In this document: positions 1,331-48,154 of the stretch, in pieces
Layout of the letters: every line of letters starts with the position of its first letter
How positions within the stretch are numbered: the stretch's first letter is position 1
Source: Pecten maximus
Lineage: Eukaryota
Assembly: GCF_902652985.1 (NCBI RefSeq)
Contig: NC_047015.1
Location: 1,674,001-1,738,000, forward strand
Direction: 5' to 3'
DNA length: 64,000 bases
Notes under the pieces: generated by a model
The model's database searches: none
What the model saw: the letters and a program-made list of their open reading frames with translations, nothing else
Told to the model about the DNA's origin: nothing
Program-made: the position numbers and the translations under genes

Positions 1331-1467
1331 CTAAGGCAGCGTGTTGACATAGGTTGTCCCTCCTGGAGTCCAGCCAGTAGGTACTCCACGTCGTCAGAGA
1401 ACTCCTGAGTCTCCCCATACTCCTGACACTCATGAGCTTGCTTAACATTCTTTACCACAGTGTACAA
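1331..1467 (-). CDS. WAPL: WAPL coding exon 4, start of conserved WAPL domain; gene continues beyond the left window edge
   Basis: LYTVVKNVKQAHECQEYGETQEFSDDVEYLLAGLQEGQPMSTRCL(S) closely resembles human WAPL LYTVVQHVK...EFGENQEFTDDIEYLLSGL...NTRCLS; ttacag| acceptor and AG|GTATAA donor. Confidence 0.92.
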
Positions 1468-1762: not shown

Positions 1763-1948
1763 CTCCTTGTGCTCCTTGGAGACATGTACAGAAGTGTATG
1801 CCTCATCCCCGAGTCTGTCCGGCCAGTGTACTGCCCTGGACAGCTTAGGAGGCTCATTCGGGCGCTCGCCTGGCTCTTCCAACTTGGGTGCCATTTTAGG
1901 GATAGGGACAAGTTTTGGTGGCCCAGCTGTATCGTCCTTATTCTTGTT
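1763..1948 (-). CDS. WAPL: WAPL coding exon 3 (NKNKDDTAGPPK...HVSKEHKE)
   Basis: ttacag| acceptor and GAG|GTAGG donor; 186 nt, phase 0/0; its terminal KE joins LYTVV of the next exon as in vertebrate WAPL. Confidence 0.82.
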
Positions 1949-2899: not shown

Positions 2900-3486
2900 A
2901 ATTGTCTTCCCATTTTCTGAAAATAAACAAATTATCTTCACTTTATCTAAACATTAAGTTACCTTCCCATTTATCAAAATAAACAAATTATCTTCACTTT
3001 AAACACTAAGTTACCTTCCCATTTATCAAAAGAACAAGTTATCTTCACTTTATCTTAGCAATATGTTACCTTCCCTAAATCTAAACAACAAGTTATCTCC
3101 ACTTTATCTAAACAACAAGTTATCTCCACTTTATCTAAACAACAAGTTACCTCCACTTTATCTAAACAACAAGTTATCTTCACTTTATCTAAACAACAAG
3201 TTACCTCCACTTTATCTAAACAACAAGTTATCTCCACTTTATCTAAACAACAAGTTACCTCCACTTTATCTAAACAACAAGTTATCTCCACTTTATCTAA
3301 ACAACAAGTTATCTCCACTTTATCTAAACAACAAGTTATCTCCACTTTATCTAAACAACAAGTTATCTCCACTTTATCTAAACAACAAGTTATCTCCACT
3401 TTATCTAAACAAGTTATCTACACTTTATCTAAACAACAAGTTATCTACACTTTATCTAAACAACAAGTTATCTCCACTTTATCTAA
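2900..3486. repeat. Minisatellite, 27-bp unit (TTATCTAAACAACAAGTTATCTCCACT)
   Basis: Homogeneous at 3080-3486, degenerate to the left. Confidence 0.95.
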
Positions 3487-3913
3487 TCCGTTACCTTCCC
3501 TGTAATCAATAAGATACTTTTTATTAGGTAGGTCTACAAAGCAGGGATAAAGCAAAGACAAGTTGAATTAGATAAATCTATTTTGATAGTAATCATAAAT
3601 TGTTGACCCGATGATAAAATGCAACCATTATGCACAGGTAGAAAAAAAAAAATATATAAATAAACCAGAAAACTTGGCATTCATTATGATTGAGCCTTCA
3701 TTTAAGTTTTGCTTTAGAAACTGAATCTGTATGGGAAATTTATGACAAAAATGAAGAACTAGAGATCAAATAGTTGTTCCTGTGAGACCCTCGACAAGTC
3801 CATGAGCTATAATTTATCTAAAATTATAGGTTGAAAGATGACGGTTCTTTAAAAACTAAGCAAATAAAAAAGCAAAATAAAGAAGCACTATGCACATTTC
3901 TGATAAATGTTAC

Positions 3914-3976
3914 CCTTTCCTCTTCGTCAAAGTCTTCCTGCCAGGAGCGGACATTGTACACAGCTTTTGATGGAGA
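3914..3976 (-). CDS. WAPL: WAPL coding exon 2 (SPSKAVYNVRSWQEDFDEEER)
   Basis: tttcag| acceptor and AGG|GTAACA donor; 63 nt, phase 0/0, compatible with both neighbouring exons. Confidence 0.8.
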
Positions 3977-4124
3977 CTGAAAAAGATGATCAGTGTTAAA
4001 AGTTACATCAACAAATTGTTCACTTATAAAGGCACTAAAACATGTTTTCCTCCAAAAATACAAATTTAAAAGAAGACACATTTTAAACAATGTTTTAGTA
4101 TAATGACCAACACAAAATGTTTGT

Positions 4125-4655
4125 TTTACCCTTTTGTGACTTTGTATTACCTTTTTTACTTTGTATTACCTTTTCTGACTTTGTATTACCTTTTGTGACT
4201 TTGTATTACATTTTTTGTCTTTGTATTACCTTTTTGTGACTAAGTATTACCTTTTTCGGACTTTGTATTACCTTTTTGGGACTGTATTACCTTTTGGGAC
4301 TTAGTTTTACATTTTGTGTCTTTGTATTACATTTTGGGACTTAGTATTACATTTTGTGACTTTGTATTACCTTTTTGGGACTTTGTATTACATTTTGTGT
4401 ATTTGTATTACCTTTTGGGACTATGTATTACCTTTTTGTGACTTTGTATTACCTTTTTGGGATTAAGTATTACCTTTTTGTGACTTTGTATTACCTTTTT
4501 GGGACTAAGTATTACCTTTTGTGACTTTGTATTACCTTTTGTGTATTTGTATTACCTTTTGGGACTTTGTATTACCTTTTTGGGACTTTGCATTACCTTT
4601 TTGTGACTTTGTATTACCTTTTTCGGACTTTGTATTACCTTTTTGGGACTTTGCA
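4125..4655. repeat. Minisatellite, 20-21-bp unit (GACTTTGTATTACCTTTTTGG) spanning the WAPL exon/intron boundary
   Basis: About 25 copies; most read AAG|GTAATA on the minus strand. Confidence 0.95.
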
Positions 4656-6387
4656 ACATTTTCTTTTGCACATCTCCTTTGTTTTTGGACTTGAATATCT
4701 TCTTCTCTCTGATCCGGACTGTCTTGGCCTTGGTCAGTTTGGGAGGTTCTGCCTCGCTAGAATCAGCTGATGTTTGACTAAGGTCCTGTGTGGTTTGTGA
4801 ACTCTCTTCCTCCTCGGACTGACTGCCCTCACTCTGCTGCATGGTCTGTTCCTCACCGACTTCCATGGACTCAGCTGCTAAAGGACCTTCCTCAGACTTC
4901 TCCAAACTTTCAGCACTCTGTTGAGATTCTGCATCTTCATCAAAACCAAATGACGTGAAAGAGTCTTGCTTCTTTTTATTGGCTTTGACATTTTCTGGAG
5001 TGTTTTGTTCGAAGTCTTGGTCATTTTCCTCATTAGCTTGCTGCTCTTCTGGACTAGTACCAATTTTTTTGGAATCATTTTCTTCCTTCATTGCTGCAGA
5101 ATTTCTTGACCTGAAGAACTTATTATACCTAACAGACTTATCAGTATTGTCCCGTCCCCGTTTAACACCTTTCTTGTACTGTATTTTACCTGGGTTGTCA
5201 TTTTCATTAGTGGCAGATGACTGTTCTTCCATGCTTGGAGTAGAAGCACTATTATCTTCTGAAAACTCAAAGTTTGAGCTATCTGTGGCAGTTTCCTCTG
5301 ATTTACTATGTTCCTGAGAATCACTACCACTATTCTCATCAGTTTCAGCAATATCTCGTGAGTAAGGGTCTCTAACAGTTTTCTGATGGTGAAGTTTTGC
5401 CTTATTTTCACCAGTCGGTGGCTTAGGTGAACAGATTACAATAAGTGTTGATCCCTTACCATGTTTAATTTCACTTTTTTGAAGAACTTTGCTGTTGTTA
5501 AGCCTTCCTACTGGGTCCTCTGGACGTGGAACATAGTTAAATCTGCTGTAAACGGCTGGGTCCATGAAATGGCTTCGGAAGTTCAGAACAGTTGCCTTTG
5601 GATTATCTTCATCATCACTTTGTAACAAATGTGTTTTAGGGGAGCTGGAAACATTTGAAGAAAATGCCGCCATCTTTGTGTGCTTGCTGTAAGTTTGACG
5701 TTCACTGAACAAAAGGGGAGCTTCTTCCTCATCCTCGTCGTATTGTGAGAATGGGTCCTCTGGATTTGATGCTTCTTCGACTGCATAACTACTGGAATGT
5801 GATGCATAAGGTTCCCCTACAGCAGATCCCTCTGGCTCAAGTACCGGCATGTCATCGTCTTCATCATTAGAAACTGGTTTTGCAAATTGATCCATAGATA
5901 ATTGTTTTGAATTGTCAGCATTATGTTTTTTGGTAGCACGAGAATATGTCCTCACGGGTCTCTTGAATGTAGGTTGAGAATCAAAATCTTGTGTGTCTGG
6001 TTCAATCTTGGTTCTTTCAGATGTGTAAGAATGTGATTTCATTACCTTCATATTTGGAATAGCTGGCCGTCCCAAACCTGCTTGATGCGAGCTAGCAGCA
6101 GGTTCATCCTTGACTACTTTCTGCCTTGCAGTTTCACTTTCATCAGATCCGAATGAGAATGGATCCTCGGTCTCAACCTCTGTTTTAACTTTCTTGCATG
6201 TGGTTTGAAAAGGGTCTTCATCTCTGACCCTACTAAATTGTGTTTTACCCCATTTTGTATTAGCCGTTTTAATTGGGATATTCTGAGCCCCAGCCTTGTT
6301 GGTCACTATTTCATCAAAGGCTTTGCTTGCAGCAGTCTCCCTTCCATAAGATCGACTATAGGTTTTGACTGCGTATTTGCTTGCCAT
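4639..6387 (-). CDS. WAPL: WAPL (wings apart-like cohesin release factor), first coding exon, long disordered N-terminus
   Basis: Acceptor ttcag| at 6406/6405 and ATG at 6387 (MASKYAVKTYSRSYGR). It carries two YSR motifs (KTYSR, RTYSR) and FGF-type motifs (DPFSFGSD, TSFGFDED) typical of WAPL N-termini. First phase-0 donor AAG|GTAATA at 4639; alternative in-frame donors at 4618, 4597 and 4576. Confidence 0.88.
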
Positions 6388-6840
6388 GACGGATTGTCCT
6401 GTCGTCTGAAATACAAAAGTGTGACTTATTTGCATGTAGACGAATAAAATTGTAGAATAAATTCCAAGTAAAATAACTTATACAGGGTATGCTACTGCTA
6501 AAGCATGTGGCAAGTCAGACAATAGATTATTTACCCGATCTGTTGATATGATCTGATGTAAAGCAAACAAACTGCTTCGTGGTATTATTATGATCTTTAT
6601 ATATCAAACTGATTGCAATATGAAAATAAATTAAACACCAACGATAGTTTGACTACTATACGAATACAAAATCACAAACCGACAACAAAATGCGTTTGTT
6701 TATACTTCCGACAGATTGAGAATTTACAAAAACAATGCCCGATATAGTGAGATCTGAACAACTTGAGCTAATATTTGACCATTTTGCGGACTTCACATGT
6801 AACATCTACTAAAATAAACAGATCTATACACGAATCTTAC

Positions 6841-6956: not shown

Positions 6957-7644
6957 TTTCAAGCAGTACTGATCACCAATTTTGAGGCCTTGTTTCGTAT
7001 TTTGTAAAGAAAGACAACTCTTCATAGATAAAGTGAATTATCTCCACTTAGACCATATTCAAAATAGTGAGATTGTAATATTGAACCTAAGCGGTCACAT
7101 GATTTATTTTACCTTTGAAAATTCAAATGAAGGTTACTTCACTTAATTTAACTGTATTTTATTCAATGCTGCTAATTAGGCACGATGTCATCAGCAACAG
7201 ATTGAGTCGCAGGGATGAGAGATATTTACAGTTTCTGCATTATTTTGTCATTTTTTCCTATTTTGTTGCCATTCCCCCTCCAACATTCACATGTAAGAAA
7301 TAGTTTTGATAATCAGTTAAATAGGTCTGATGTATCCAAGGACAACACGACAAAAAAACAACACATATAGTATTTTCTTAGGACATGGACAAATACTAAC
7401 ACTCAAATTATATTGATGTGGATATAGAGACACCAATGTCTGTGTCCGCTAATATCCTATCATATTGATGTGGATATAGAGACACCAATGTATGTGTCCA
7501 CTAATATCCTATTACAAAATATGTATATGATTCCTCTTGTACCTGTCCGTATGAGATTTTGGATTGTTTTTTACAGTGTACCTGTCCGTATAACATTTTG
7601 TATTGTTTTTACAGTGTACCTGTCCGTATAACATTTTGTATATA

Positions 7645-9212
7645 ACACAGTTGTATCACTCGTTCTACTCCACATCACAGTTGTATCACTCGTTCTACTC
7701 CACATCACAGTTGTATCACTCATTCTACTCCACATCACAGTTGTATCACTCGTTCTACTCCACATCTCAGTTGTATCACTCGTTATTCTCCACATCACAG
7801 TTGTATCACTCGTTCTACTCCACATCACAGTTGTATCACTCGTTCTACTCCACATCACAGTTGTATCACTCGTTCTACTCCACATCACAGTTGTATCACT
7901 CGTTCTACTCCACATCACAGTTGTATCACTCGTTCTACTCCACATCACAGTTGTATCACTCGTTCTACTCCACATCACAGTTGTATCACTCATTCTACTC
8001 CACACATCAGTTGTATCACTCGTTCTACTCCACATCACAGTTGTATCACTCGTTCTACTCCACATCTCAGTTGTATCACTCGTTCTACTCCACATCACAG
8101 TTGTATCACTCGTTCTACTCCACATCACAGTTGTATCACTCATTCTACTCCACACATCAGTTGTATCACTCGTTCTACTCCACATCACAGTTGTATCACT
8201 CGTTCTAATCCACATCTCAGTTGTATCACTCGTTCTTTTCCACATCACAGTTGTATCACTCATTCTACTCCACATCACAGTTGTATCACTCGTTCTACTC
8301 CACATCACAGTTGTATCACTCGTTCTTTTCCACATCACAGTTGTATCACTCGTTCTACTCCACATCTCAGTTGTATCACTCGTTCTTTTCCACATCACAG
8401 TTGTATCACTCGTTCTACTCCACATCACAGTTGTATCACTCGTTCTACTCCACACATCAGTTGTATCACTCGTTCTACTCCACATCACAGTTGTATCACT
8501 CGTTCTACTCCACACATCAGTTGTATCACTCGTTCTACTCCACATCACAGTTGTATCACTCGTTCTTTTCCACATCTCAGTTGCATCACTCGTTCTACTC
8601 CACATCACAGTTGTATCACTCGTTCTACTCCACATCACAGTTGTATCACTCGTTCTACTCCACATCACAGTTGTATCACTCGTTCTACTCCACATCACAG
8701 TTGTATCACTCGTTCTAATCCACATCTCAGTTGTATCACTCGTTCTACTCACCATCTCAGTTGTATCACTCATTCTACTCCACATCACAGTTGTATCACT
8801 CGTTATTCTCCACATCACAGTTGTATCACTCGTTCTTCTCCACATCACAGTTGTATCACTCGTTCTACTCCACATCACAGTTGTATCACTCGTTCTACTC
8901 CACATCACAGTTGTATCACTCATTTTACTCCACACATCAGTTGTATCACTCGTTCTTCTCCAAATCTCAGTTGTATCACTCGTTCTACTCCAAATCTCAG
9001 TTGTATCACTCATTTTACTCCACACATCAGTTGTATCACTCGTTCTACTCCACATATCAGTTGTATCACTCGTTCTACTCCACATATCAGTTGTATCACT
9101 CATAATACTCCACATATCAGTTGTATCACTCATAATACTCCACATATCAGTTGTATCACTCATAATACTCCACATATCAGTTGTATCACTGCTCTACTCC
9201 ACATCTCAGTTG
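7645..9212. repeat. Minisatellite, 30-bp unit (CAGTTGTATCACTCGTTCTACTCCACATCA)
   Basis: About 52 copies in exact 30-bp register. Confidence 0.98.
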
Positions 9213-9644
9213 TAAAATTCCGTCGTGGTTGTTGGTACTCTCCCGTTATTTCCTTACATCTGCCTCCGACAGCCTTAATTGAAATCACAATCCTACTAGC
9301 CAGTCTGAAGTACCCATGCTTGCTTTATTACATTGTCCATCGCCTCAAGCTAGAAAACAGAACTACATTGTGTAATTCCTAAAATGTTGTTTGTAAAACA
9401 GTATCAAAATCAAGGTACACATAACATAAATTTGACGAGTTAAACATAAATTTTTCTCGCATGTAGCTCCCTTGAGCCCCACTTTTGGAAAAAAATCTTC
9501 AACATTGCTTCTTCACGAAATCCATCTGCGGCATTTGGTGTCACTTTCATCTTCAGCCAATCAACATTCTGCCAGAGATATGTAATCCTCTTCTTATTCA
9601 TTTTGGCTGTCCAGCTGCTGTAAAATTCTGACTGATCAGTAGAT

Positions 9645-26676: not shown

Positions 26677-27937
26677 CAGGGTTGCCAACTCACGCACGTG
26701 AGACGAAAAAGTCACGTAAAAACGTCCCTAAAATGTCCCTTCTCACGTTGAAGCAATCCTCACGTAACGTGAGGTACAAATCTCACACATTGATTAAGTT
26801 TTCTCAAGTTGCCTCACGCGAAGCCATGAAATCGACAACTTTAGCTTGGGACTGGTCAAAGGGGAATAACTCTTACAGTTTTTGTAAAGATTACACCAGG
26901 CGTCGCGCTTCACATCCGGTCGGTAGCGACGGAAGCATGTTCGGAGAGCTGACTTCTAAACGCGATAACTAAGCTTAGGCCTACAAAAATAGTGAGTAAT
27001 ATTCACATTCTCAGTTTATAACTGAACAATCCCTTTGATATTTCGTGAAATATGCCGTCGCCTAAAAGGAAAAAGATCGATATCTGGTCCACTAAGCCTA
27101 AGCTCGCCAAGTTCAAAGAATCGCCATGGGAAAAAAATCACGATTGGTTTTCTAAACGTGTTTTCGTAAAGTAAAGTAGCATGCCTATTGCAAGTTGTTT
27201 AAAGCCAAGTTTTCGATCAGATAAGCGTAGTATGTGATATAAAACGCCACATTTTGTCAGTTGGCATTGAGTTTGTTTTACAGGTAAAGGTTTATATAAT
27301 TACCACAGCTAAAAATTAAACTCTTGACAGATGATAATTAATAAGTAATTGCATTTTATTTTTACTTTTGCAAGACAGTCGGGGAATTCTATATGGCAGT
27401 GACGGACAAAATGATTGCAAAGTTCCCCCTGCATAATCCTTCTTTGTCGAATTGACATGGATTTTTTGGTACCTAGCCATAGAGCTATATACTTTATATT
27501 ATCTACTAGAAATTAAATCCAAAAATCTCAAACGCCTACATGATATAAATAGAACAGTTATCCATTGCTTCAAAACATTTTATAATCTTAACCCTAAAAC
27601 TATTAATAATCAACTTACAAAAACTATTGGAACTTATTTAGTTCTTTAAGTTCCATAACTGGCAGCTAGATTACATATAATGTCACCAAGGATAGAAGGA
27701 TTCACTTGAGGAGAAAATTATTGACTATCAGCTTGCTCCAAAGGAGGAGATTTCAAAGCAAGAAGATATATTAAATAAATGGCTTAAATATGTGTTAATG
27801 TCTGATATTTTTTCTACAACATTTAATCAAATAATAAAACGCCGTGATGCCGTGACGTCGTAAAAAAGTCTCACACATTGCAAGAGCCCAATGTGGGAGA
27901 TCTCCCACATTGGGCTACTTACAGGTTGGCAACCCTG
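26677..27937 (+). mobile_element. Internally deleted hAT-type DNA transposon with a 6-bp TSD, in ERLIN intron 5
   Basis: TIRs CAGGGTTGCCAAC / GTTGGCAACCCTG, flanked by the direct repeat CGATTG on both sides; subterminal (CT)CACG repeats; frameshifted transposase N-terminal remnant at ~27052-27270. Confidence 0.85.
27052..27270 (+). pseudogene. Degenerate transposase N-terminus (NLS plus Zn-finger remnant)
   Basis: Read across frameshifts: MPSPKRKK...KFKES.WEKNHDW...AYCKLFKAKFSI...CDIKRHILSVG; resembles the BED/TTF-type zinc finger of hAT transposases. Confidence 0.6.
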
Positions 27938-28032
27938 CGATTGTAAAGCAAATAAATCCCTCTGGACAAATCCTTTCTGTCTTTGAGTATGCAAGATAAG
28001 AAATGGAATCAAAATAACTAGAGACAGCTTAC

Positions 28033-28220
28033 CAAACAAATCAATGTAGACCTCCTGGAGATTGTTCATGCTACAGAACTGGTTGAGTTCGTGGTGAACC
28101 TTGTTGTAGATGAGCGTTTTATCGTAGTCAGCAGTGTAGTTTCTCACAATGTCGAACACAGCATTGATATCCAGCTTATTGACAACTTCTATGCGGTCAA
28201 AGTATATCATTACTCCTCCA
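28033..28220 (-). CDS. ERLIN1/2: ERLIN coding exon 5 ([14 protein letters not shown]...HHELNQFCS...QEVYIDLF)
   Basis: Highly conserved SPFH core; tag| acceptor and G|GTAAG donor; 188 nt, phases 2/1. Confidence 0.95.
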
Positions 28221-28375
28221 CTAGTAACGAAAAATAATCTCATTAAACGTACTTCACTCAAAACAACGCAAATCCTGGAATGATAGCAATAGCGGAAATA
28301 TCTGTCCTTCCACAAGGACTCAAATTTACCTAGTGTGACTTGAGTCAGGACTTCATAGGACATATTTTGGATATA

Positions 28376-29269
28376 CAGTCGAATCTGTCCAAACGACCAT
28401 CTCTATTTAGCGACCCTCTGTTCTAAGCAACCATTTCAATTCCTCCCGACCGTTTTCGCTATATATTTTAACTCTATTAAGCGACCCTCTGTTTACGCGA
28501 CCAGCGACCACAATTTTTCGTTCCCGTGATAACAATAACTCTCCAATAAGCGACCAGAAGTCTCCAAAATGCCTTACATTACCATTTCGCTTTAATAACA
28601 CCCAAGTAGTTTTACTTTTCGTGCAAAAGGACGGGAGAGGAGGCGAAGAGACGGTCTAGAATTCTGACGATTTTCAGACGTTTTATATACGATATATCAA
28701 TTTGCATGCGAAATATAACAATGAAGGAATGCATAAACAGATAACTTACTGTTAAATCGTGATTTGTTATCTTTTTTGAGACATTAAAACAGATATTTGC
28801 CAGTGAAAAAGTCACCGTTTTTAAAGTAGGAAATGCAGGAATGTAAATAATAATCGGAGCGGATATCCGCACCAGGTTTTCAGGAATTAAAAATATATAT
28901 ATAAATAATTTGAAAGTAATCTAATTAGCCAATGAAATTATATTTCTCATGTTAAATCGATGTATTTTGCTATGCTGAAAGAATTTTAAAAAATACATAT
29001 AATGATGAAAAATTAGCACAGTAATAATTATATAAAAAAAAAAAAAAATTTAAATAAATAAATAAATAAAAGTTTTTTGTTTTGTTTTATTCAAAGTGGT
29101 GGTTCATTTTTCATATATATTATAAACCATTATTGCCAATTTATAAAGTGAATAGAAAGCTTATGAACATTTATTAAATTTAAGATACCATCTCTATTAA
29201 GAAACCACTCTCCATTAAGAGACCGTTTTTCAACTTCCCTTGAGTGGTCGCTTAATACAGATTTGACTG
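28376..29269. mobile_element. Tc1/mariner-superfamily (pogo/Tigger-like) MITE in ERLIN intron 4
   Basis: TA|CAGTCGAATCTGT...ACAGATTTGACTG|TA TIRs with TA duplication; repeated subterminal TAAGCGACC motifs; no transposase ORF. Confidence 0.85.
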
Positions 29270-41639: not shown

Positions 41640-42360
41640 AGGCGTACGGGTCATTAATGGAATACAGGTGTACGGGTCATTAATGGTAAACAGGTGTACG
41701 GGTCATTAATGGTATACAGGTGAATGGGTCATTAATGGTATTCAGGTGTACGGGTCATTAATGAGATACACAGGTGTGAAAGTCATTAATGATATAAACA
41801 GGTGTACGGGTCTTTAATGGTATATACAGGTGTACTGGTCATTATTGATATAAACAGGTGTGAAAGACATTAATGATATAAACAGGTGTCCGGGTCATTT
41901 ATGATATGAACAGGTGTACGGGTCATTAATGGTATACAGGTGTACGGGTCATTAATGGTAAACAGGTGTACGGGTCATTAATGGTATTCAGGTGTACGGG
42001 TCATTAATGATATAAACAGGTGTACAGGTCATTAATGATATAAACAGGTGTACGGGTCATTAATGATATAAACAGGTGTACGGGTCATTAATGGTATACA
42101 GGTGTACTGGTCATTAATGGTATACAGGTGTACGGGTCATTAATGGTATTCAGGTGTACGGGTCATTAATGGTATTCAGGTGTACGGGTCATTAATGATA
42201 TAAACAGGTGTACGGGTCATTAATGATATACAGGTGTACGGGTCATTAATGGTATAAACAGGTGTACGGGTCATTAATGATATAAACAGGTGTACGGGTC
42301 ATTAATGGTATACAGGTGTACGGGTCATTAATGGTATACAGGTGTGCGGGTCATTAATGA
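41640..42360. repeat. Minisatellite, 26-28-bp unit (ACAGGTGTACGGGTCATTAATGGTAT)
   Basis: About 26 copies, ending ~17 nt from a splice donor. Confidence 0.96.
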
Positions 42361-42377
42361 TAAACAATCATCCTTAC

Positions 42378-43085
42378 CATCTGTGTTACTTTCAGTCTTC
42401 TCCAATTTACGGTGTTTGGTGCCAGGAGACGGAGCATCCTTCCTTGCTGTGGAGCTGACGATTTCGTCCGATGAAAATGCTGGATTTGAATGTGAATGTT
42501 TGGAAGATTTTACATAAGCCCTTGCGACACCATCAGTTTTCGTGCTAGATGAACTATGTCTATTTTCAGGTTTTTTCAATTCACCTTTGTATTCATAAGA
42601 TCGCACGTGCACACTGCCACGCTCGTCGTCATCACTGACGGGAAGGTTGAGTTTCAGTTCGTCCTGATTCCGCCACTTATTGCTGAGTTCGTGCTCCCTG
42701 GATTTCTCTTGCATTGCACGAAGTTTGGCACTATCGGTTGCGCACTGTGTCGACAGAGGCTGGTCGTTAAAGTCTAGAGATTTGCTTTGTTCCTCAGAGT
42801 ACCTAGGACCACCCTGGGGAGGTGGAGGGGGCGCCTTCTTTTGTCGATTATGTACCTCCACGGATGCAGTTCTTCCTCGATCCTCATTTCGGGGTCTTTC
42901 CTCTTTCCTTGTTCTCTCAAACGCCGGCGATTCCCTTCGTTTGCGTTCCTTCTTTCTCTTGGTACCTGTGAGATCACTGTGTGTGCGTTTGACCTTCGAC
43001 CCCTTTCTGACCGAGTCCTCATCGTTCCTTCTATAATTATGGTAGTACTGCTCCTCATCCTGGTACTCCACTATAATAGAACGAT
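42378..43085 (-). CDS. Uncharacterised membrane protein, coding exon 4 (charged, disordered)
   Basis: gtgcag| acceptor; DRSIIVEYQDEEQYYH...ESNTD; G|GTAAG donor; 708 nt open, phase 1/1. Confidence 0.82.
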
Positions 43086-43181
43086 CTGCACAAACAAAAC
43101 ATCAACATGTAACATTATAGATTGTGTTACGGCGATCCTCGCATACTGGACGTCCATTTACAAAGTGAGAAGAACAGAATA

Positions 43182-47050: not shown

Positions 47051-47459
47051 ATTACCCATACCTACCAATAATAATTAGCTACTGATTTAAAACATATATT
47101 TAACGCTTTCCTCGCGTAATATTCAAGGTACAAGAAAGTTTCACTACACAATAATACTTTATTATTATATCTATTAGAACAGACGATGTGTCCAAGTATC
47201 GTCGACCCCGTGCGTTTATAGGGCTGTGTTCATGATTCAAGAGAAGAAATACTCAGCAAAAAATCCAGATCAACATAAAGAAAATAATTTGTTGACCTGA
47301 ACATACAAAATAATAATGCAATGAAGCTATTGCGAAACATAGGGAAACTATTAAGCGATAAAGCAAGAAAAACAGATACAATGTATACATATTAGTGGTA
47401 AGGCCATAGAAAACACTGGTTAGTAAGCCAGGGTACAGGACTAGTCACGAGTAACCTAC

Positions 47460-47770
47460 ACTGGGCTAGTCTCTGCTCTGACGTGGCTCTCTGTAGAGAC
47501 GGAGCCCGCTTTGGTCTATCAACGTAATAGGCATCGGACGGACCTGTCGAGTACATAGACGGTGCTCCCATCCACAGTCCTGCGCTCCCGACCTTGGGAA
47601 GCCGGGGGTCAACACGTGGTTCCATTCTGGGGTCAATGCGAGGGTCAAGTCGTGGATCAAGGTGAGGGTCAAGGCCATTACCAAAGTTGCTATTTTTACT
47701 AAGACTTGCATCTGTAGTTGAATTCAAATGCTGAAAGCTTCTCCCACGGTTTTTGCTATCACGCATTCGC
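47460..47770 (-). CDS. Uncharacterised membrane protein, coding exon 2 (basic juxtamembrane segment, DPR repeats)
   Basis: ttacag| acceptor, phase 2 in; RMRDSKNRGR...LDPHLDPRLDPRIDPRMEPRVDPRLP...; T|GTAGGT donor phase 1 matches the next exon. Confidence 0.75.
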
Positions 47771-48154
47771 CTGTAAAGAAATACAATGTCGTTAAACAAA
47801 ACATGCAGCCCAAACCAAATAATATATTTTAGTTATTGCAGCCAAGGTGAACCCTTTTCCAACATGCGGGTCAACCGTTCTCACCTCCGGCCGGATAAAA
47901 CACACGTAACACGTGATTCTCTGGCAGTTCTTTCGATATCCGATTATGTCTGGGTTGTTTGTCCTCTGTCCTGTTAAAGTTGATACATAACCATACATAA
48001 ATATACACTTCATTACAATGATTACATCTACATTTACATTTGGTCCATCACTACAGTGATGATTATTCAACGACATAGACAGGCTGATAAAAGATAACAT
48101 TTACAGTGTACATGGATAAAGTCGCCCTTAGCTTCAAAGTCGCCCTTAGCTTCA

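What the first reader, a model, noticed from the sequence alone, without database searches (positions are those of the whole stretch)
4125..4660. WAPL splice-donor minisatellite: a ladder of 5' splice sites that add SPKK-type repeats
Seen: the 21-bp unit (minus strand AAG|GTAATACAAAGTCCCAAA) fuses the end of the large WAPL exon (QSPKK) with its own donor site. In-frame donors sit at 4639, 4618, 4597 and 4576. Using them adds 0-3 heptads (VIQSPKK, VIQSHKK, VMQSPKK). Reading past 4576 meets a 20-bp unit that shifts the frame to a stop at 4554-4552. Established: S-P-x-K is the CDK consensus, SPKK is the histone H1 DNA-binding motif, and WAPL acts in a cell-cycle-regulated way. Inference: array copy number and donor choice could tune the number of phosphosites in, or the NMD-sensitive output of, a cohesin regulator, making the array a 'splice-site VNTR'.
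Basis: partly seen in the sequence, partly recalled or inferred. Interest (0 to 1): 0.85.

Follow-up and report, generated by a model that had tools for sequence, protein, structure and literature searches.

The report
Minisatellite copying a WAPL splice donor
In the king scallop, a 21-base tandem repeat has copied the end of a WAPL exon and its splice signal about 26 times into the intron, but the annotated mRNAs use only the first, ancestral copy, so it looks like an ordinary by-product of a very repeat-rich genome and belongs to a kind already known from a few human genes.

Summary
Window 4120-4653 (minus strand) holds a 21/20-bp minisatellite of about 26 units. Its first unit is the last 15 nt of the large WAPL coding exon (QSPKK) plus the first 6 nt of the intron (AAG|GTAATA).

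Four donors (last exon base 4639, 4618, 4597, 4576) are in frame. From 4556 on, every donor gives a frameshift or follows the stop at 4554-4552.

The window is Pecten maximus chromosome LR736838.1. The gene matches the two NCBI WAPL isoforms at 100% in all four exons tested.

The functional reading is not supported:
- Both annotated isoforms join ...QSPKK|SPSKAVYNVRSW, which is the first donor only.
- None of 69 WAPL proteins has more than one SPKK at this position.
- Three other scallop genera and a more distant relative have a short intron with no array.
- Units past the fourth are frame-broken.

Splice-site-spanning minisatellites are common here. I found five in four scallop WAPL genes, against 3.7 expected by chance, and the models always use the exon-proximal copy. 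Minisatellites cover 60% of the P. maximus WAPL locus.

The kind is already described in human F7, IFI6, CBS, LMNB2 and PDGF. Low-level use of donors 2-4 cannot be excluded without RNA-seq split reads.

The parts
4639..6405 (-). Large WAPL coding exon. The CDS starts at the ATG at 6387 and the exon ends in phase 0 with ...MLQSPKK (AAG at 4641-4639). The 5' boundary at 6405 (tatttcag|ACG) is inferred.
   Evidence: ORF. 100% identity over 583 aa to XP_033732446.1. The CDS start of the public gene model maps to 6387. Junction mapping. Acceptor read.
4120..4653 (-). Minisatellite with a 21-bp unit (CAAAGTCCCAAAAAG|GTAATA) in about 26 copies. The first copy is the exon end plus the authentic donor. 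Later units are often 20 or 19 nt.
3977..4638 (-). Coding intron 1, 662 nt. About 520 nt of it is the array. Orthologous introns are 271, 174 and 261 nt and have no array.
4576..4639 (-). The four in-frame candidate donors (last exon base 4639, 4618, 4597, 4576). Only 4639 is used in the annotated mRNAs. The other three would add VIQSPKK, VIQSHKK and VMQSPKK.
4552..4554 (-). In-frame TAA, created where a 20-nt unit puts GGTAAT into frame as AGG TAA. Every donor downstream of it is behind a premature stop.
3914..3976 (-). Next WAPL exon (SPSKAVYNVRSWQEDFDEEER), phase 0 at both ends. An annotated alternative donor 18 nt further on (last base 3896, AAT|GTGCAT) adds VTFIRN in isoform X1.
1763..1948 (-). 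WAPL coding exon 3 (NKNKDD...KEHKE).
1331..1467 (-). WAPL coding exon 4, where the Pfam WAPL domain begins.

Best explanation
This is a minisatellite specific to the Pecten lineage that was born on the exon-intron junction of the large WAPL exon. A 21-nt segment, made of the last 15 nt of the exon and the first 6 nt of the intron, was duplicated in tandem.

The probable mechanism is slippage between two CAAAGT motifs lying exactly 21 nt apart: one at exon positions -15 to -10, the other at intron positions +7 to +12. That arrangement is still visible in Mizuhopecten.

The array then grew to about 26 units and decayed through 1-nt deletions and substitutions. It therefore repeats a mid-strength 5' splice site about 25 more times inside the intron.

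The spliceosome uses the first, ancestral, exon-proximal donor (last exon base 4639), and the rest of the array is removed as intron. The extra donors are pseudo-sites, like those of the human F7 intron 7 VNTR.

The array has no demonstrated function. It is a tolerated by-product of the unusually high minisatellite load of scallop introns.

Shown here: the anatomy, the gene identity, the absence of the array from relatives, first-donor use in the annotated models, and the commonness of such arrays. Inferred: the slippage origin, the silence of the pseudo-sites in vivo, and neutrality.
For: - Anatomy.
- Source and gene: the window is identical to P. maximus GCA_902652985.1 LR736838.1 across the WAPL 5' part. 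Exons are 100% identical to XP_033732446.1 and XP_033732437.1.
- Donor use: both isoforms read ...MLQSPKK|SPSKAVYNVRSW. Their only difference is VTFIRN at the next exon's donor.
- Conservation: the SPKK|GT junction is ancestral and single-copy in oysters, pearl oysters, clams, mussels and octopus.
- Relatives: the orthologous introns are 271, 174 and 261 nt without an array. The last P. maximus unit plus its flank aligns to the exon end plus intron start of the relatives. A fifth taxon (L005) also lacks the array.
- Microhomology: CAAAGT...CAAAGT 21 nt apart in M. yessoensis.
- Donor strength: a weight matrix from 56 scallop WAPL donors scores AAG|GTAATA at 7.3 bits, the 39th percentile. GTAATA donors are used elsewhere in Y. 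balloti WAPL. Twenty array copies score the same or better, and 22 of 26 candidate donors would give a frameshift or premature stop. Indiscriminate use would therefore cripple the gene.
- Repeat load: minisatellites cover 45% of the window and 60% of the P. maximus WAPL locus.
- Other such arrays: five splice-site-spanning arrays in four scallop WAPL genes, against 3.66 expected from random seeding (P = 0.31). The models always use the exon-proximal copy.
- Literature: junction-spanning minisatellites in F7, LMNB2 and PDGF use only the authentic donor. The pseudo-sites are functional but lose to the most upstream site (PMC1557585). Tandem repeats are the largest repeat class in scallop genomes (PMC10225492).
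Against: - No RNA-seq split reads or full-length cDNAs of P. maximus could be examined. NCBI models report only well-supported introns, so minor isoforms would be missed.
- In the human IFI6 (6-16) and CBS genes, the two pseudo-donors nearest the exon are used as well as the authentic one (PMC1557585). The 21-nt spacing here is closer to IFI6's short unit than to F7's 37 nt.
- The three units next to the exon keep both the 21-nt length and an open frame. That is what selection for tolerable mis-splicing would produce, although it is not significant (p = 0.07).
- Only one assembly was available, so array length and polymorphism are unverified.
Confidence: 0.78

Rival explanations
1. Splicing noise. 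The first donor dominates, but the nearest pseudo-donors (4618, 4597, 4576, perhaps 4556 and beyond) are used at a low, unregulated level. This would yield a few percent of WAPL with +7, +14 or +21 residues and some NMD substrates, as in human IFI6 and CBS. Array length would then modestly affect WAPL output.
For: The pseudo-donors share the authentic site's 9-mer and the 15 nt upstream of it. [quoted passage not shown] The first three extra units are in frame and open.
Against: Neither annotated isoform shows this, although the same pipeline did report an 18-nt tandem-donor isoform on the next exon. No isoforms are annotated for the other in-frame arrays either: the 42-bp array in P. maximus intron 7 and the 36-bp array of about 60 copies in Y. 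balloti. In F7, identical pseudo-sites stay silent.
Confidence: 0.3
2. This is a functional splice-site VNTR, in which regulated donor choice or allelic copy number sets the number of S-P-x-K (CDK-type) motifs in WAPL or its NMD-sensitive fraction, and so tunes cohesin release.
For: SPKK and SPSK straddle this junction. They are the only two S-P-x-K motifs in the first 640 residues, and they are conserved across molluscs. Each of donors 2 and 4 would add one more SPKK.
Against: All 69 WAPL proteins compared have at most one SPKK at this position, and no heptad insertion occurs anywhere. The array is absent from every relative sampled. One of the three heptads is SHKK, which is not a CDK site. 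The array is degenerate beyond unit 4. No isoform is annotated. Such arrays arise at the chance rate in this genome.
Confidence: 0.04
3. The array acts in cis as an intronic platform of U1 snRNP binding sites. It would reinforce definition of the unusually long (about 1.77 kb) upstream exon, or suppress premature cleavage, without itself being spliced.
For: About 20 consensus-quality U1 target sites lie within 520 nt directly downstream of a mid-strength donor. The transcript is unstructured there (z = +0.87), so the sites would be accessible.
Against: Relatives splice the same long exon with equally modest donors (AAG|GTATTA, GTAACA, GTATCT) and no array. No conservation and no test were possible.
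Confidence: 0.05
4. Assembly artefact. The array, or its length, is an error of the long-read assembly.
For: Only one assembly was available, and arrays of near-identical short units are error-prone.
Against: The units carry many distinct substitutions and indels in a non-periodic order, which is unlike a collapsed or stuttered artefact. Dozens of comparable arrays exist in four independently assembled scallop genomes.
Confidence: 0.03

Closest known systems
Human F7 intron 7 VNTR (37-bp minisatellite whose first monomer spans the exon 7 donor)
   Same: The first unit spans the exon-intron boundary. The authentic donor is followed by identical pseudo-donors. Only the most upstream site appears in the mRNA (PMC1557585; here, the annotated models).
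   Different: F7 has 5-9 units of 37 bp, containing 4 nt of exon. This array has about 26 units of 21 bp, containing 15 nt of exon. F7 is shown to be polymorphic and was tested with 50 minigene constructs. Here neither polymorphism nor splicing could be tested. This organism is a mollusc, not a mammal.
Human IFI6 (interferon-inducible 6-16) intron 2 minisatellite
   Same: The authentic donor is followed by 25 pseudo-sites. The short unit leaves neighbouring donors in frame, so using them adds a few residues each. Copy number is almost the same as here (PMC1557585 citing Turri et al. 1995).
   Different: In IFI6 the two proximal pseudo-sites are used constitutively. Here no such isoform is annotated. 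The original paper was not available to read.
Human CBS intron 13, LMNB2 and PDGF junction-spanning minisatellites
   Same: Same architecture. In LMNB2 and PDGF only the authentic donor is used, and in CBS two pseudo-sites are also used.
   Different: The units are longer (81-100 bp in PDGF and LMNB2). These are known to me only through the summary in PMC1557585.
Tandem alternative 5' splice sites a few nucleotides apart
   Same: They give in-frame alternative donors that add a few residues. A real example lies on the very next exon of this gene (+18 nt, VTFIRN), conserved in four scallops.
   Different: Those are single, conserved, annotated alternative sites, not products of a repeat array.

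Membership tests
Junction-spanning (splice-donor) minisatellite, as in F7, IFI6 and CBS | Tandem array with a unit in the minisatellite range (about 10-100 bp) | tested here: met
   Period 21, 26.2 copies, 84% matches. Units listed.
Junction-spanning (splice-donor) minisatellite, as in F7, IFI6 and CBS | The first monomer spans an exon-intron boundary, so the donor sequence is repeated in the intron | tested here: met
   The exon end was mapped with the public protein to last base 4639. The unit is 15 nt of exon plus 6 nt of intron. Twenty copies carry AAG|GTAAT[A/G].
Junction-spanning (splice-donor) minisatellite, as in F7, IFI6 and CBS | The authentic (most upstream) donor is the one used, or the main one | tested here: inconclusive
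   Both NCBI isoforms use it. These are gene models. No split reads were available (searches found no P. maximus transcript fragments).
Junction-spanning (splice-donor) minisatellite, as in F7, IFI6 and CBS | Copy number is polymorphic among individuals (VNTR) | not testable with these tools
   Only one P. maximus assembly is held.
WAPL (wings apart-like cohesin release factor) | C-terminal WAPL domain (Pfam PF07814) | tested here: met
   Exon 1467-1331 hits at E 6e-12, 45.6 bits against a cut-off of 24.6. The full-length public protein carries PF07814.
WAPL (wings apart-like cohesin release factor) | Disordered N-terminal region with YSR and FGF-type motifs | tested here: met
   YSR at residues 10, 148, 280 and 342. 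FGF at 480 and FSF at 77. That these motifs bind PDS5 is from my own knowledge and was not tested here.
WAPL (wings apart-like cohesin release factor) | Orthology to annotated WAPL proteins | tested here: met
   100% identity to P. maximus XP_033732446.1 in the four exons tested. About 81% identity in the large exon to three other scallops.
CDK-type S-P-x-K / SPKK phosphosite repeat | Motif present in the expressed protein | tested here: met
   One SPKK and one SPSK straddle the junction in the annotated protein, and both are conserved.
CDK-type S-P-x-K / SPKK phosphosite repeat | Variable number of motif copies among isoforms or orthologs | tested here: not met
   0 of 69 WAPL proteins have more than one SPKK upstream of the anchor. 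No isoform differs at this position.
CDK-type S-P-x-K / SPKK phosphosite repeat | Phosphorylation of the site | not testable with these tools
   This needs phosphoproteomics.

The most novel reading that the evidence does not exclude
Donors 2-4 of the array are used in vivo in a regulated or allele-dependent way. King-scallop WAPL would then carry one to three SPKK motifs at this junction (besides the constant SPSK), and a share of transcripts spliced further down the array would go to NMD. Minisatellite length would become a heritable dial on a cohesin regulator.

A broader version: scallop genomes, where splice-site-spanning minisatellites arise repeatedly (five in four WAPL orthologs, twice independently at the same donor), offer a natural experiment on how spliceosomes choose among identical sites outside mammals.
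Probability: 0.05. Interest if true: 0.7.

Novelty: new member of a known kind. Interest (0 to 1): 0.3.

Why it matters
As a WAPL regulator it probably does not matter. The protein made from the annotated mRNAs is the ordinary, conserved one.

Its value is as a natural test case. About 20 donors share the same 9-mer (AAG|GTAATA) at 20-21-nt spacing behind a 1.77-kb exon. In the same gene there is also an 8-copy acceptor array and a 6-copy donor array flanking a single 112-nt exon.

If RNA-seq confirms that only the exon-proximal copies are used, the first-site rule established for the human F7 donor array would extend to a mollusc.

It is also a warning for gene prediction in repeat-rich bivalve genomes. 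Open reading frames that run through such arrays look like coding repeats but are intron.

Tried and rejected
1. Transcript evidence from P. maximus.
- Three word-index protein searches were run: the large exon, an oyster full-length WAPL restricted to the junction region, and the last 180 residues of the read-through ORF.
- They found the two NCBI models but no transcript-derived fragment of this species. The exon tail search found nothing at all.

2. Pfam and PDB on the large exon.
- No hits, as expected for a disordered region.
- Identity had to come from exon 4 and from the orthologs.

3. The idea that splice-site-spanning arrays are enriched at junctions.
- Rejected. 3.66 are expected and 5 observed, P = 0.31.

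4. The idea that such arrays are selected to have unit lengths divisible by 3.
- Four of five do (21, 33, 42 and 36 nt, against 58 nt), nominal P = 0.045.
- However, 25 of all 54 arrays in these loci also have periods divisible by 3. Against that background the excess is not significant, so I dropped the idea.

5. Preservation of 21-nt units next to the exon as a sign of selection: p = 0.07, not significant.

6. A dispersed repeat or transposon origin of the unit.
- Rejected. All 20 matches in the window lie inside the array, and the unit is the local exon end plus intron start.

7. RNA structure or a known RNA family: none.

8. The Turri et al. 1995 IFI6 paper could not be opened. It is cited only through PMC1557585.

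9. Look-ups of the X2 isoforms failed because only the longest product of each gene is indexed. The X1 isoforms worked.

10. Handling of spliced models.
Exons were searched one by one by reference.
- The public proteins were mapped back onto the genomic loci in a script. That script only translated seven-codon stretches across each candidate junction.

11. No contig looked human, and the window has no N.

Full report
**1. What is in the sequence**

On the minus strand the window reads ...ATGTTGCAAAGTCCCAAAAAG|GTAATACAAAGTCCGAAAAAG|GTAATACAAAGTCACAAAAAG|GTAATGCAAAGTCCCAAAAAG|GTAATA....
- Tandem Repeats Finder gives one array at 4120-4653: period 21, 26.2 copies, 84% matches, with a weaker two-unit periodicity of about 40.
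- Cut at each GTAA, the array has 11 units of 21 nt, 12 of 20 nt and 2 of 19 nt, behind the exon tail that forms the first copy.
- The 21-mer with up to three mismatches occurs 20 times in the window, all inside the array. Shuffled sequence gives none.
- The array is therefore real and local, not a dispersed element.
- The transcript has no predicted structure (z = +0.87) and no Rfam match.

**2. The gene**

- The array abuts a 627-codon open frame. That frame has no Pfam or PDB match of its own.
- Downstream exons were located by reading the sequence and checking frames: 3976-3914, 1948-1763 and 1467-1331.
- The last of these hits Pfam WAPL above the curated threshold.
- A profile-free search of 1.8 billion representative proteins with the exon returned molluscan WAPL proteins.
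- A search seeded from an oyster WAPL returned named WAPLs from many bivalves.
- All four window exons are 100% identical to Pecten maximus WAPL isoform X2, XP_033732446.1.
- The window's minus strand from 6435 to 1 is base-for-base identical to GCA_902652985.1 chromosome LR736838.1.
- The CDS begins at 6387. A probable acceptor at 6406/6405 makes this an internal exon of about 1.77 kb (inferred).

**3. The donors**

- The exon ends in phase 0 at 4639.
- Candidate donors with last exon base 4639, 4618, 4597 and 4576 are in frame with no stop. They would add 0-3 heptads: VIQSPKK, VIQSHKK, VMQSPKK.
- The next unit has 20 nt, which makes donor 4556 phase 2 and brings TAA (4554-4552) into frame. 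All later donors lie behind that stop.
- I mapped the public proteins onto the four scallop loci and recovered 15 introns each.
- A weight matrix from the 56 donors other than this one scores AAG|GTAATA at 7.3 bits, the 39th percentile of real donors. GTAATA donors are used elsewhere in Ylistrum WAPL.
- Twenty array copies score the same or better. Twenty-two of the 26 candidates would give a frameshift or premature stop.

**4. Which donor is used**

- Both annotated P. maximus isoforms read ...KKMLQSPKK|SPSKAVYNVRSW, which is the first donor.
- X1 and X2 differ by six residues (VTFIRN). These come from an alternative donor 18 nt downstream on the next exon (3896 versus 3914).
- The same X1/X2 pair is annotated in Mizuhopecten, Argopecten and Ylistrum.
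- The annotation pipeline therefore does report small tandem-donor isoforms in this gene, but reports none in the array.
- These are gene models, not reads. I found no transcript-derived P. maximus protein in the large collection.

**5. Comparative evidence**

- The exon end ...SPKK followed directly by SP[SA]KA.YNVRSW (or AAAVYNVRSW) is conserved in scallops, oysters, pearl oysters, clams, freshwater mussels and octopus.
- Of 69 WAPL proteins with the anchor motif, none has more than one SPKK in the 60 residues upstream. None has a heptad-like insertion anywhere.
- I fetched the orthologous loci. Coding intron 1 is 271 nt in M. yessoensis, 174 nt in Y. balloti and 261 nt in A. irradians, against 662 nt here. 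None has a repeat.
- A more distant relative, known only from a Logan contig, also goes from SPKK|GTAGAT straight into unique sequence.
- In the alignment, the last P. maximus unit and its flank line up with the exon end and intron start of the relatives. The array is thus about 25 extra units inserted at the junction.
- According to PMC10225492, Amusium and Pecten split about 130 million years ago. If Ylistrum is similarly placed, the array is younger than that. This dating is an inference.

**6. Origin**

- In M. yessoensis the exon has CAAAGT at -15 to -10 and the intron has CAAAGT at +7 to +12, exactly 21 nt apart.
- Slippage or unequal exchange between two such motifs would duplicate exactly the unit seen here.
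- This is an inference from the sequences, not a test.

**7. Such arrays are commonplace here**

- Minisatellites (period 10 or more, TRF score 100 or more) cover 45% of the window. They cover 60% of the P. maximus WAPL locus, against 23-39% in the other three scallops.
- I searched every intron for extra copies of its own splice-site 14-mer and found four more cases:
  - P. maximus intron 6 acceptor, 33-bp unit, 8 copies;
  - P. maximus intron 7 donor, 42-bp unit, 6 copies at 96% identity;
  - Y. balloti intron 7 donor, 36-bp unit, about 60 copies, with a different intronic part, so it arose independently at the same junction;
  - A. irradians intron 5 acceptor, 58-bp unit, about 6 copies.
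- In every case the annotated model uses the exon-proximal copy.
- For A. irradians, two transcript-sized Logan contigs encode the same protein apart from one or two substitutions.
- A simple seeding model expects 3.66 junction-spanning arrays in these four genes. Five are observed (P = 0.31).
- Neither the divisibility of unit lengths by three nor the run of 21-nt units next to the exon stands out against background.

**8. Comparison with what is known**

PMC1557585 describes exactly this architecture.
- In human F7 intron 7, the first 37-bp monomer spans the exon 7 donor. The identical pseudo-sites are functional but silent, because the most upstream site wins.
- The paper lists four more genes. 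In IFI6/6-16, 25 pseudo-sites follow the authentic donor and the two proximal ones are used. In CBS, two pseudo-sites are used. In LMNB2 and PDGF, only the authentic donor is used.
- The scallop array is a new member of this kind. It is unusual only in its host gene, its phylum and the number of near-identical sites.

**9. Verdict**

- Best explanation (0.78): a young, tolerated junction-spanning minisatellite whose extra donors are pseudo-sites.
- Low-level noisy use of donors 2-4 is plausible (0.3) and compatible with that explanation.
- A regulated SPKK ladder is unlikely (about 0.04-0.05).
- The decisive data are split reads and allele lengths, which these tools do not hold.

**10. Procedure note**

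- Exons were searched one at a time by reference.

Noticed in passing
window 3896-3914 (minus strand): A real, annotated tandem alternative donor on the next WAPL exon. AGG|GTAACA (last base 3914) gives isoform X2. AAT|GTGCAT 18 nt further on (last base 3896) gives X1, adding VTFIRN. The same pair is annotated in Mizuhopecten, Argopecten and Ylistrum. Two of these species also have a third isoform lacking ER.
   Followed up: partly
L004:15440-15689 and L004:15769-16022 (P. maximus WAPL, outside the window): One 112-nt exon is flanked on both sides by minisatellites that copy its splice sites. A 33-bp unit repeats the acceptor 8 times upstream. A 42-bp unit repeats the donor CAG|GTAACT 6 times downstream at 96% identity. 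Both are in frame and open. The gene model uses the exon-proximal copies.
   Followed up: partly
L002:11347-13600 (Ylistrum balloti WAPL intron 7): About 60 copies of a 36-bp unit repeat the same exon 7 donor (GATACAG|GTAATAC). The intronic part of the unit differs from the P. maximus array at the same junction, so the two arose independently. M. yessoensis and A. irradians have no array there.
   Followed up: partly
L003:16790-17206 (Argopecten irradians WAPL intron 5): A 58-bp minisatellite repeats the acceptor (catacag|AGTCTC) about 6 times. The last copy is the one used in the model and in two transcript-sized Logan contigs.
   Followed up: partly
whole window; L004: Minisatellite density is extreme. 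There are 42 arrays covering 45% of the 64-kb window and 30 arrays covering 60% of the 47-kb WAPL locus. The orthologous loci of three other scallops show 23-39%. Most of 6.5-64 kb is array after array, with different units of 19-65 bp.
   Followed up: partly
window 2926-3486 and 2-1207: The next two WAPL introns in the window also hold large arrays: a 27-bp unit in about 21 copies, and a 47-bp unit in about 25 copies with a 284-bp higher-order period. Some units of the 27-bp array contain GGAGGTAAC, which also resembles a donor.
   Followed up: no
window 7571-9175 (minus strand) and 7603-9105 (plus strand): A 534-codon open frame, with long frames on the opposite strand, runs through the 30-bp array at 7646-9214. 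These are repeat artefacts, not genes.
   Followed up: no
window 4627-4650 and 3965-3976 (protein residues 580-587): SPKK and SPSK, which straddle the exon junction, are the only two S-P-x-K motifs in the first 640 residues of P. maximus WAPL. The pair is conserved from bivalves to octopus. This suggests a conserved proline-directed kinase target, independent of the array.
   Followed up: partly
window 27830-28402 (minus strand): A 191-codon open frame with a sub-threshold Pfam hit to Band_7/SPFH (E 8e-4, 19.9 bits against a cut-off of 23.6). It may be an exon or a gene remnant upstream of WAPL. Two other long frames (42331-43101 and 47395-47832, minus strand) had no hit.
   Followed up: partly
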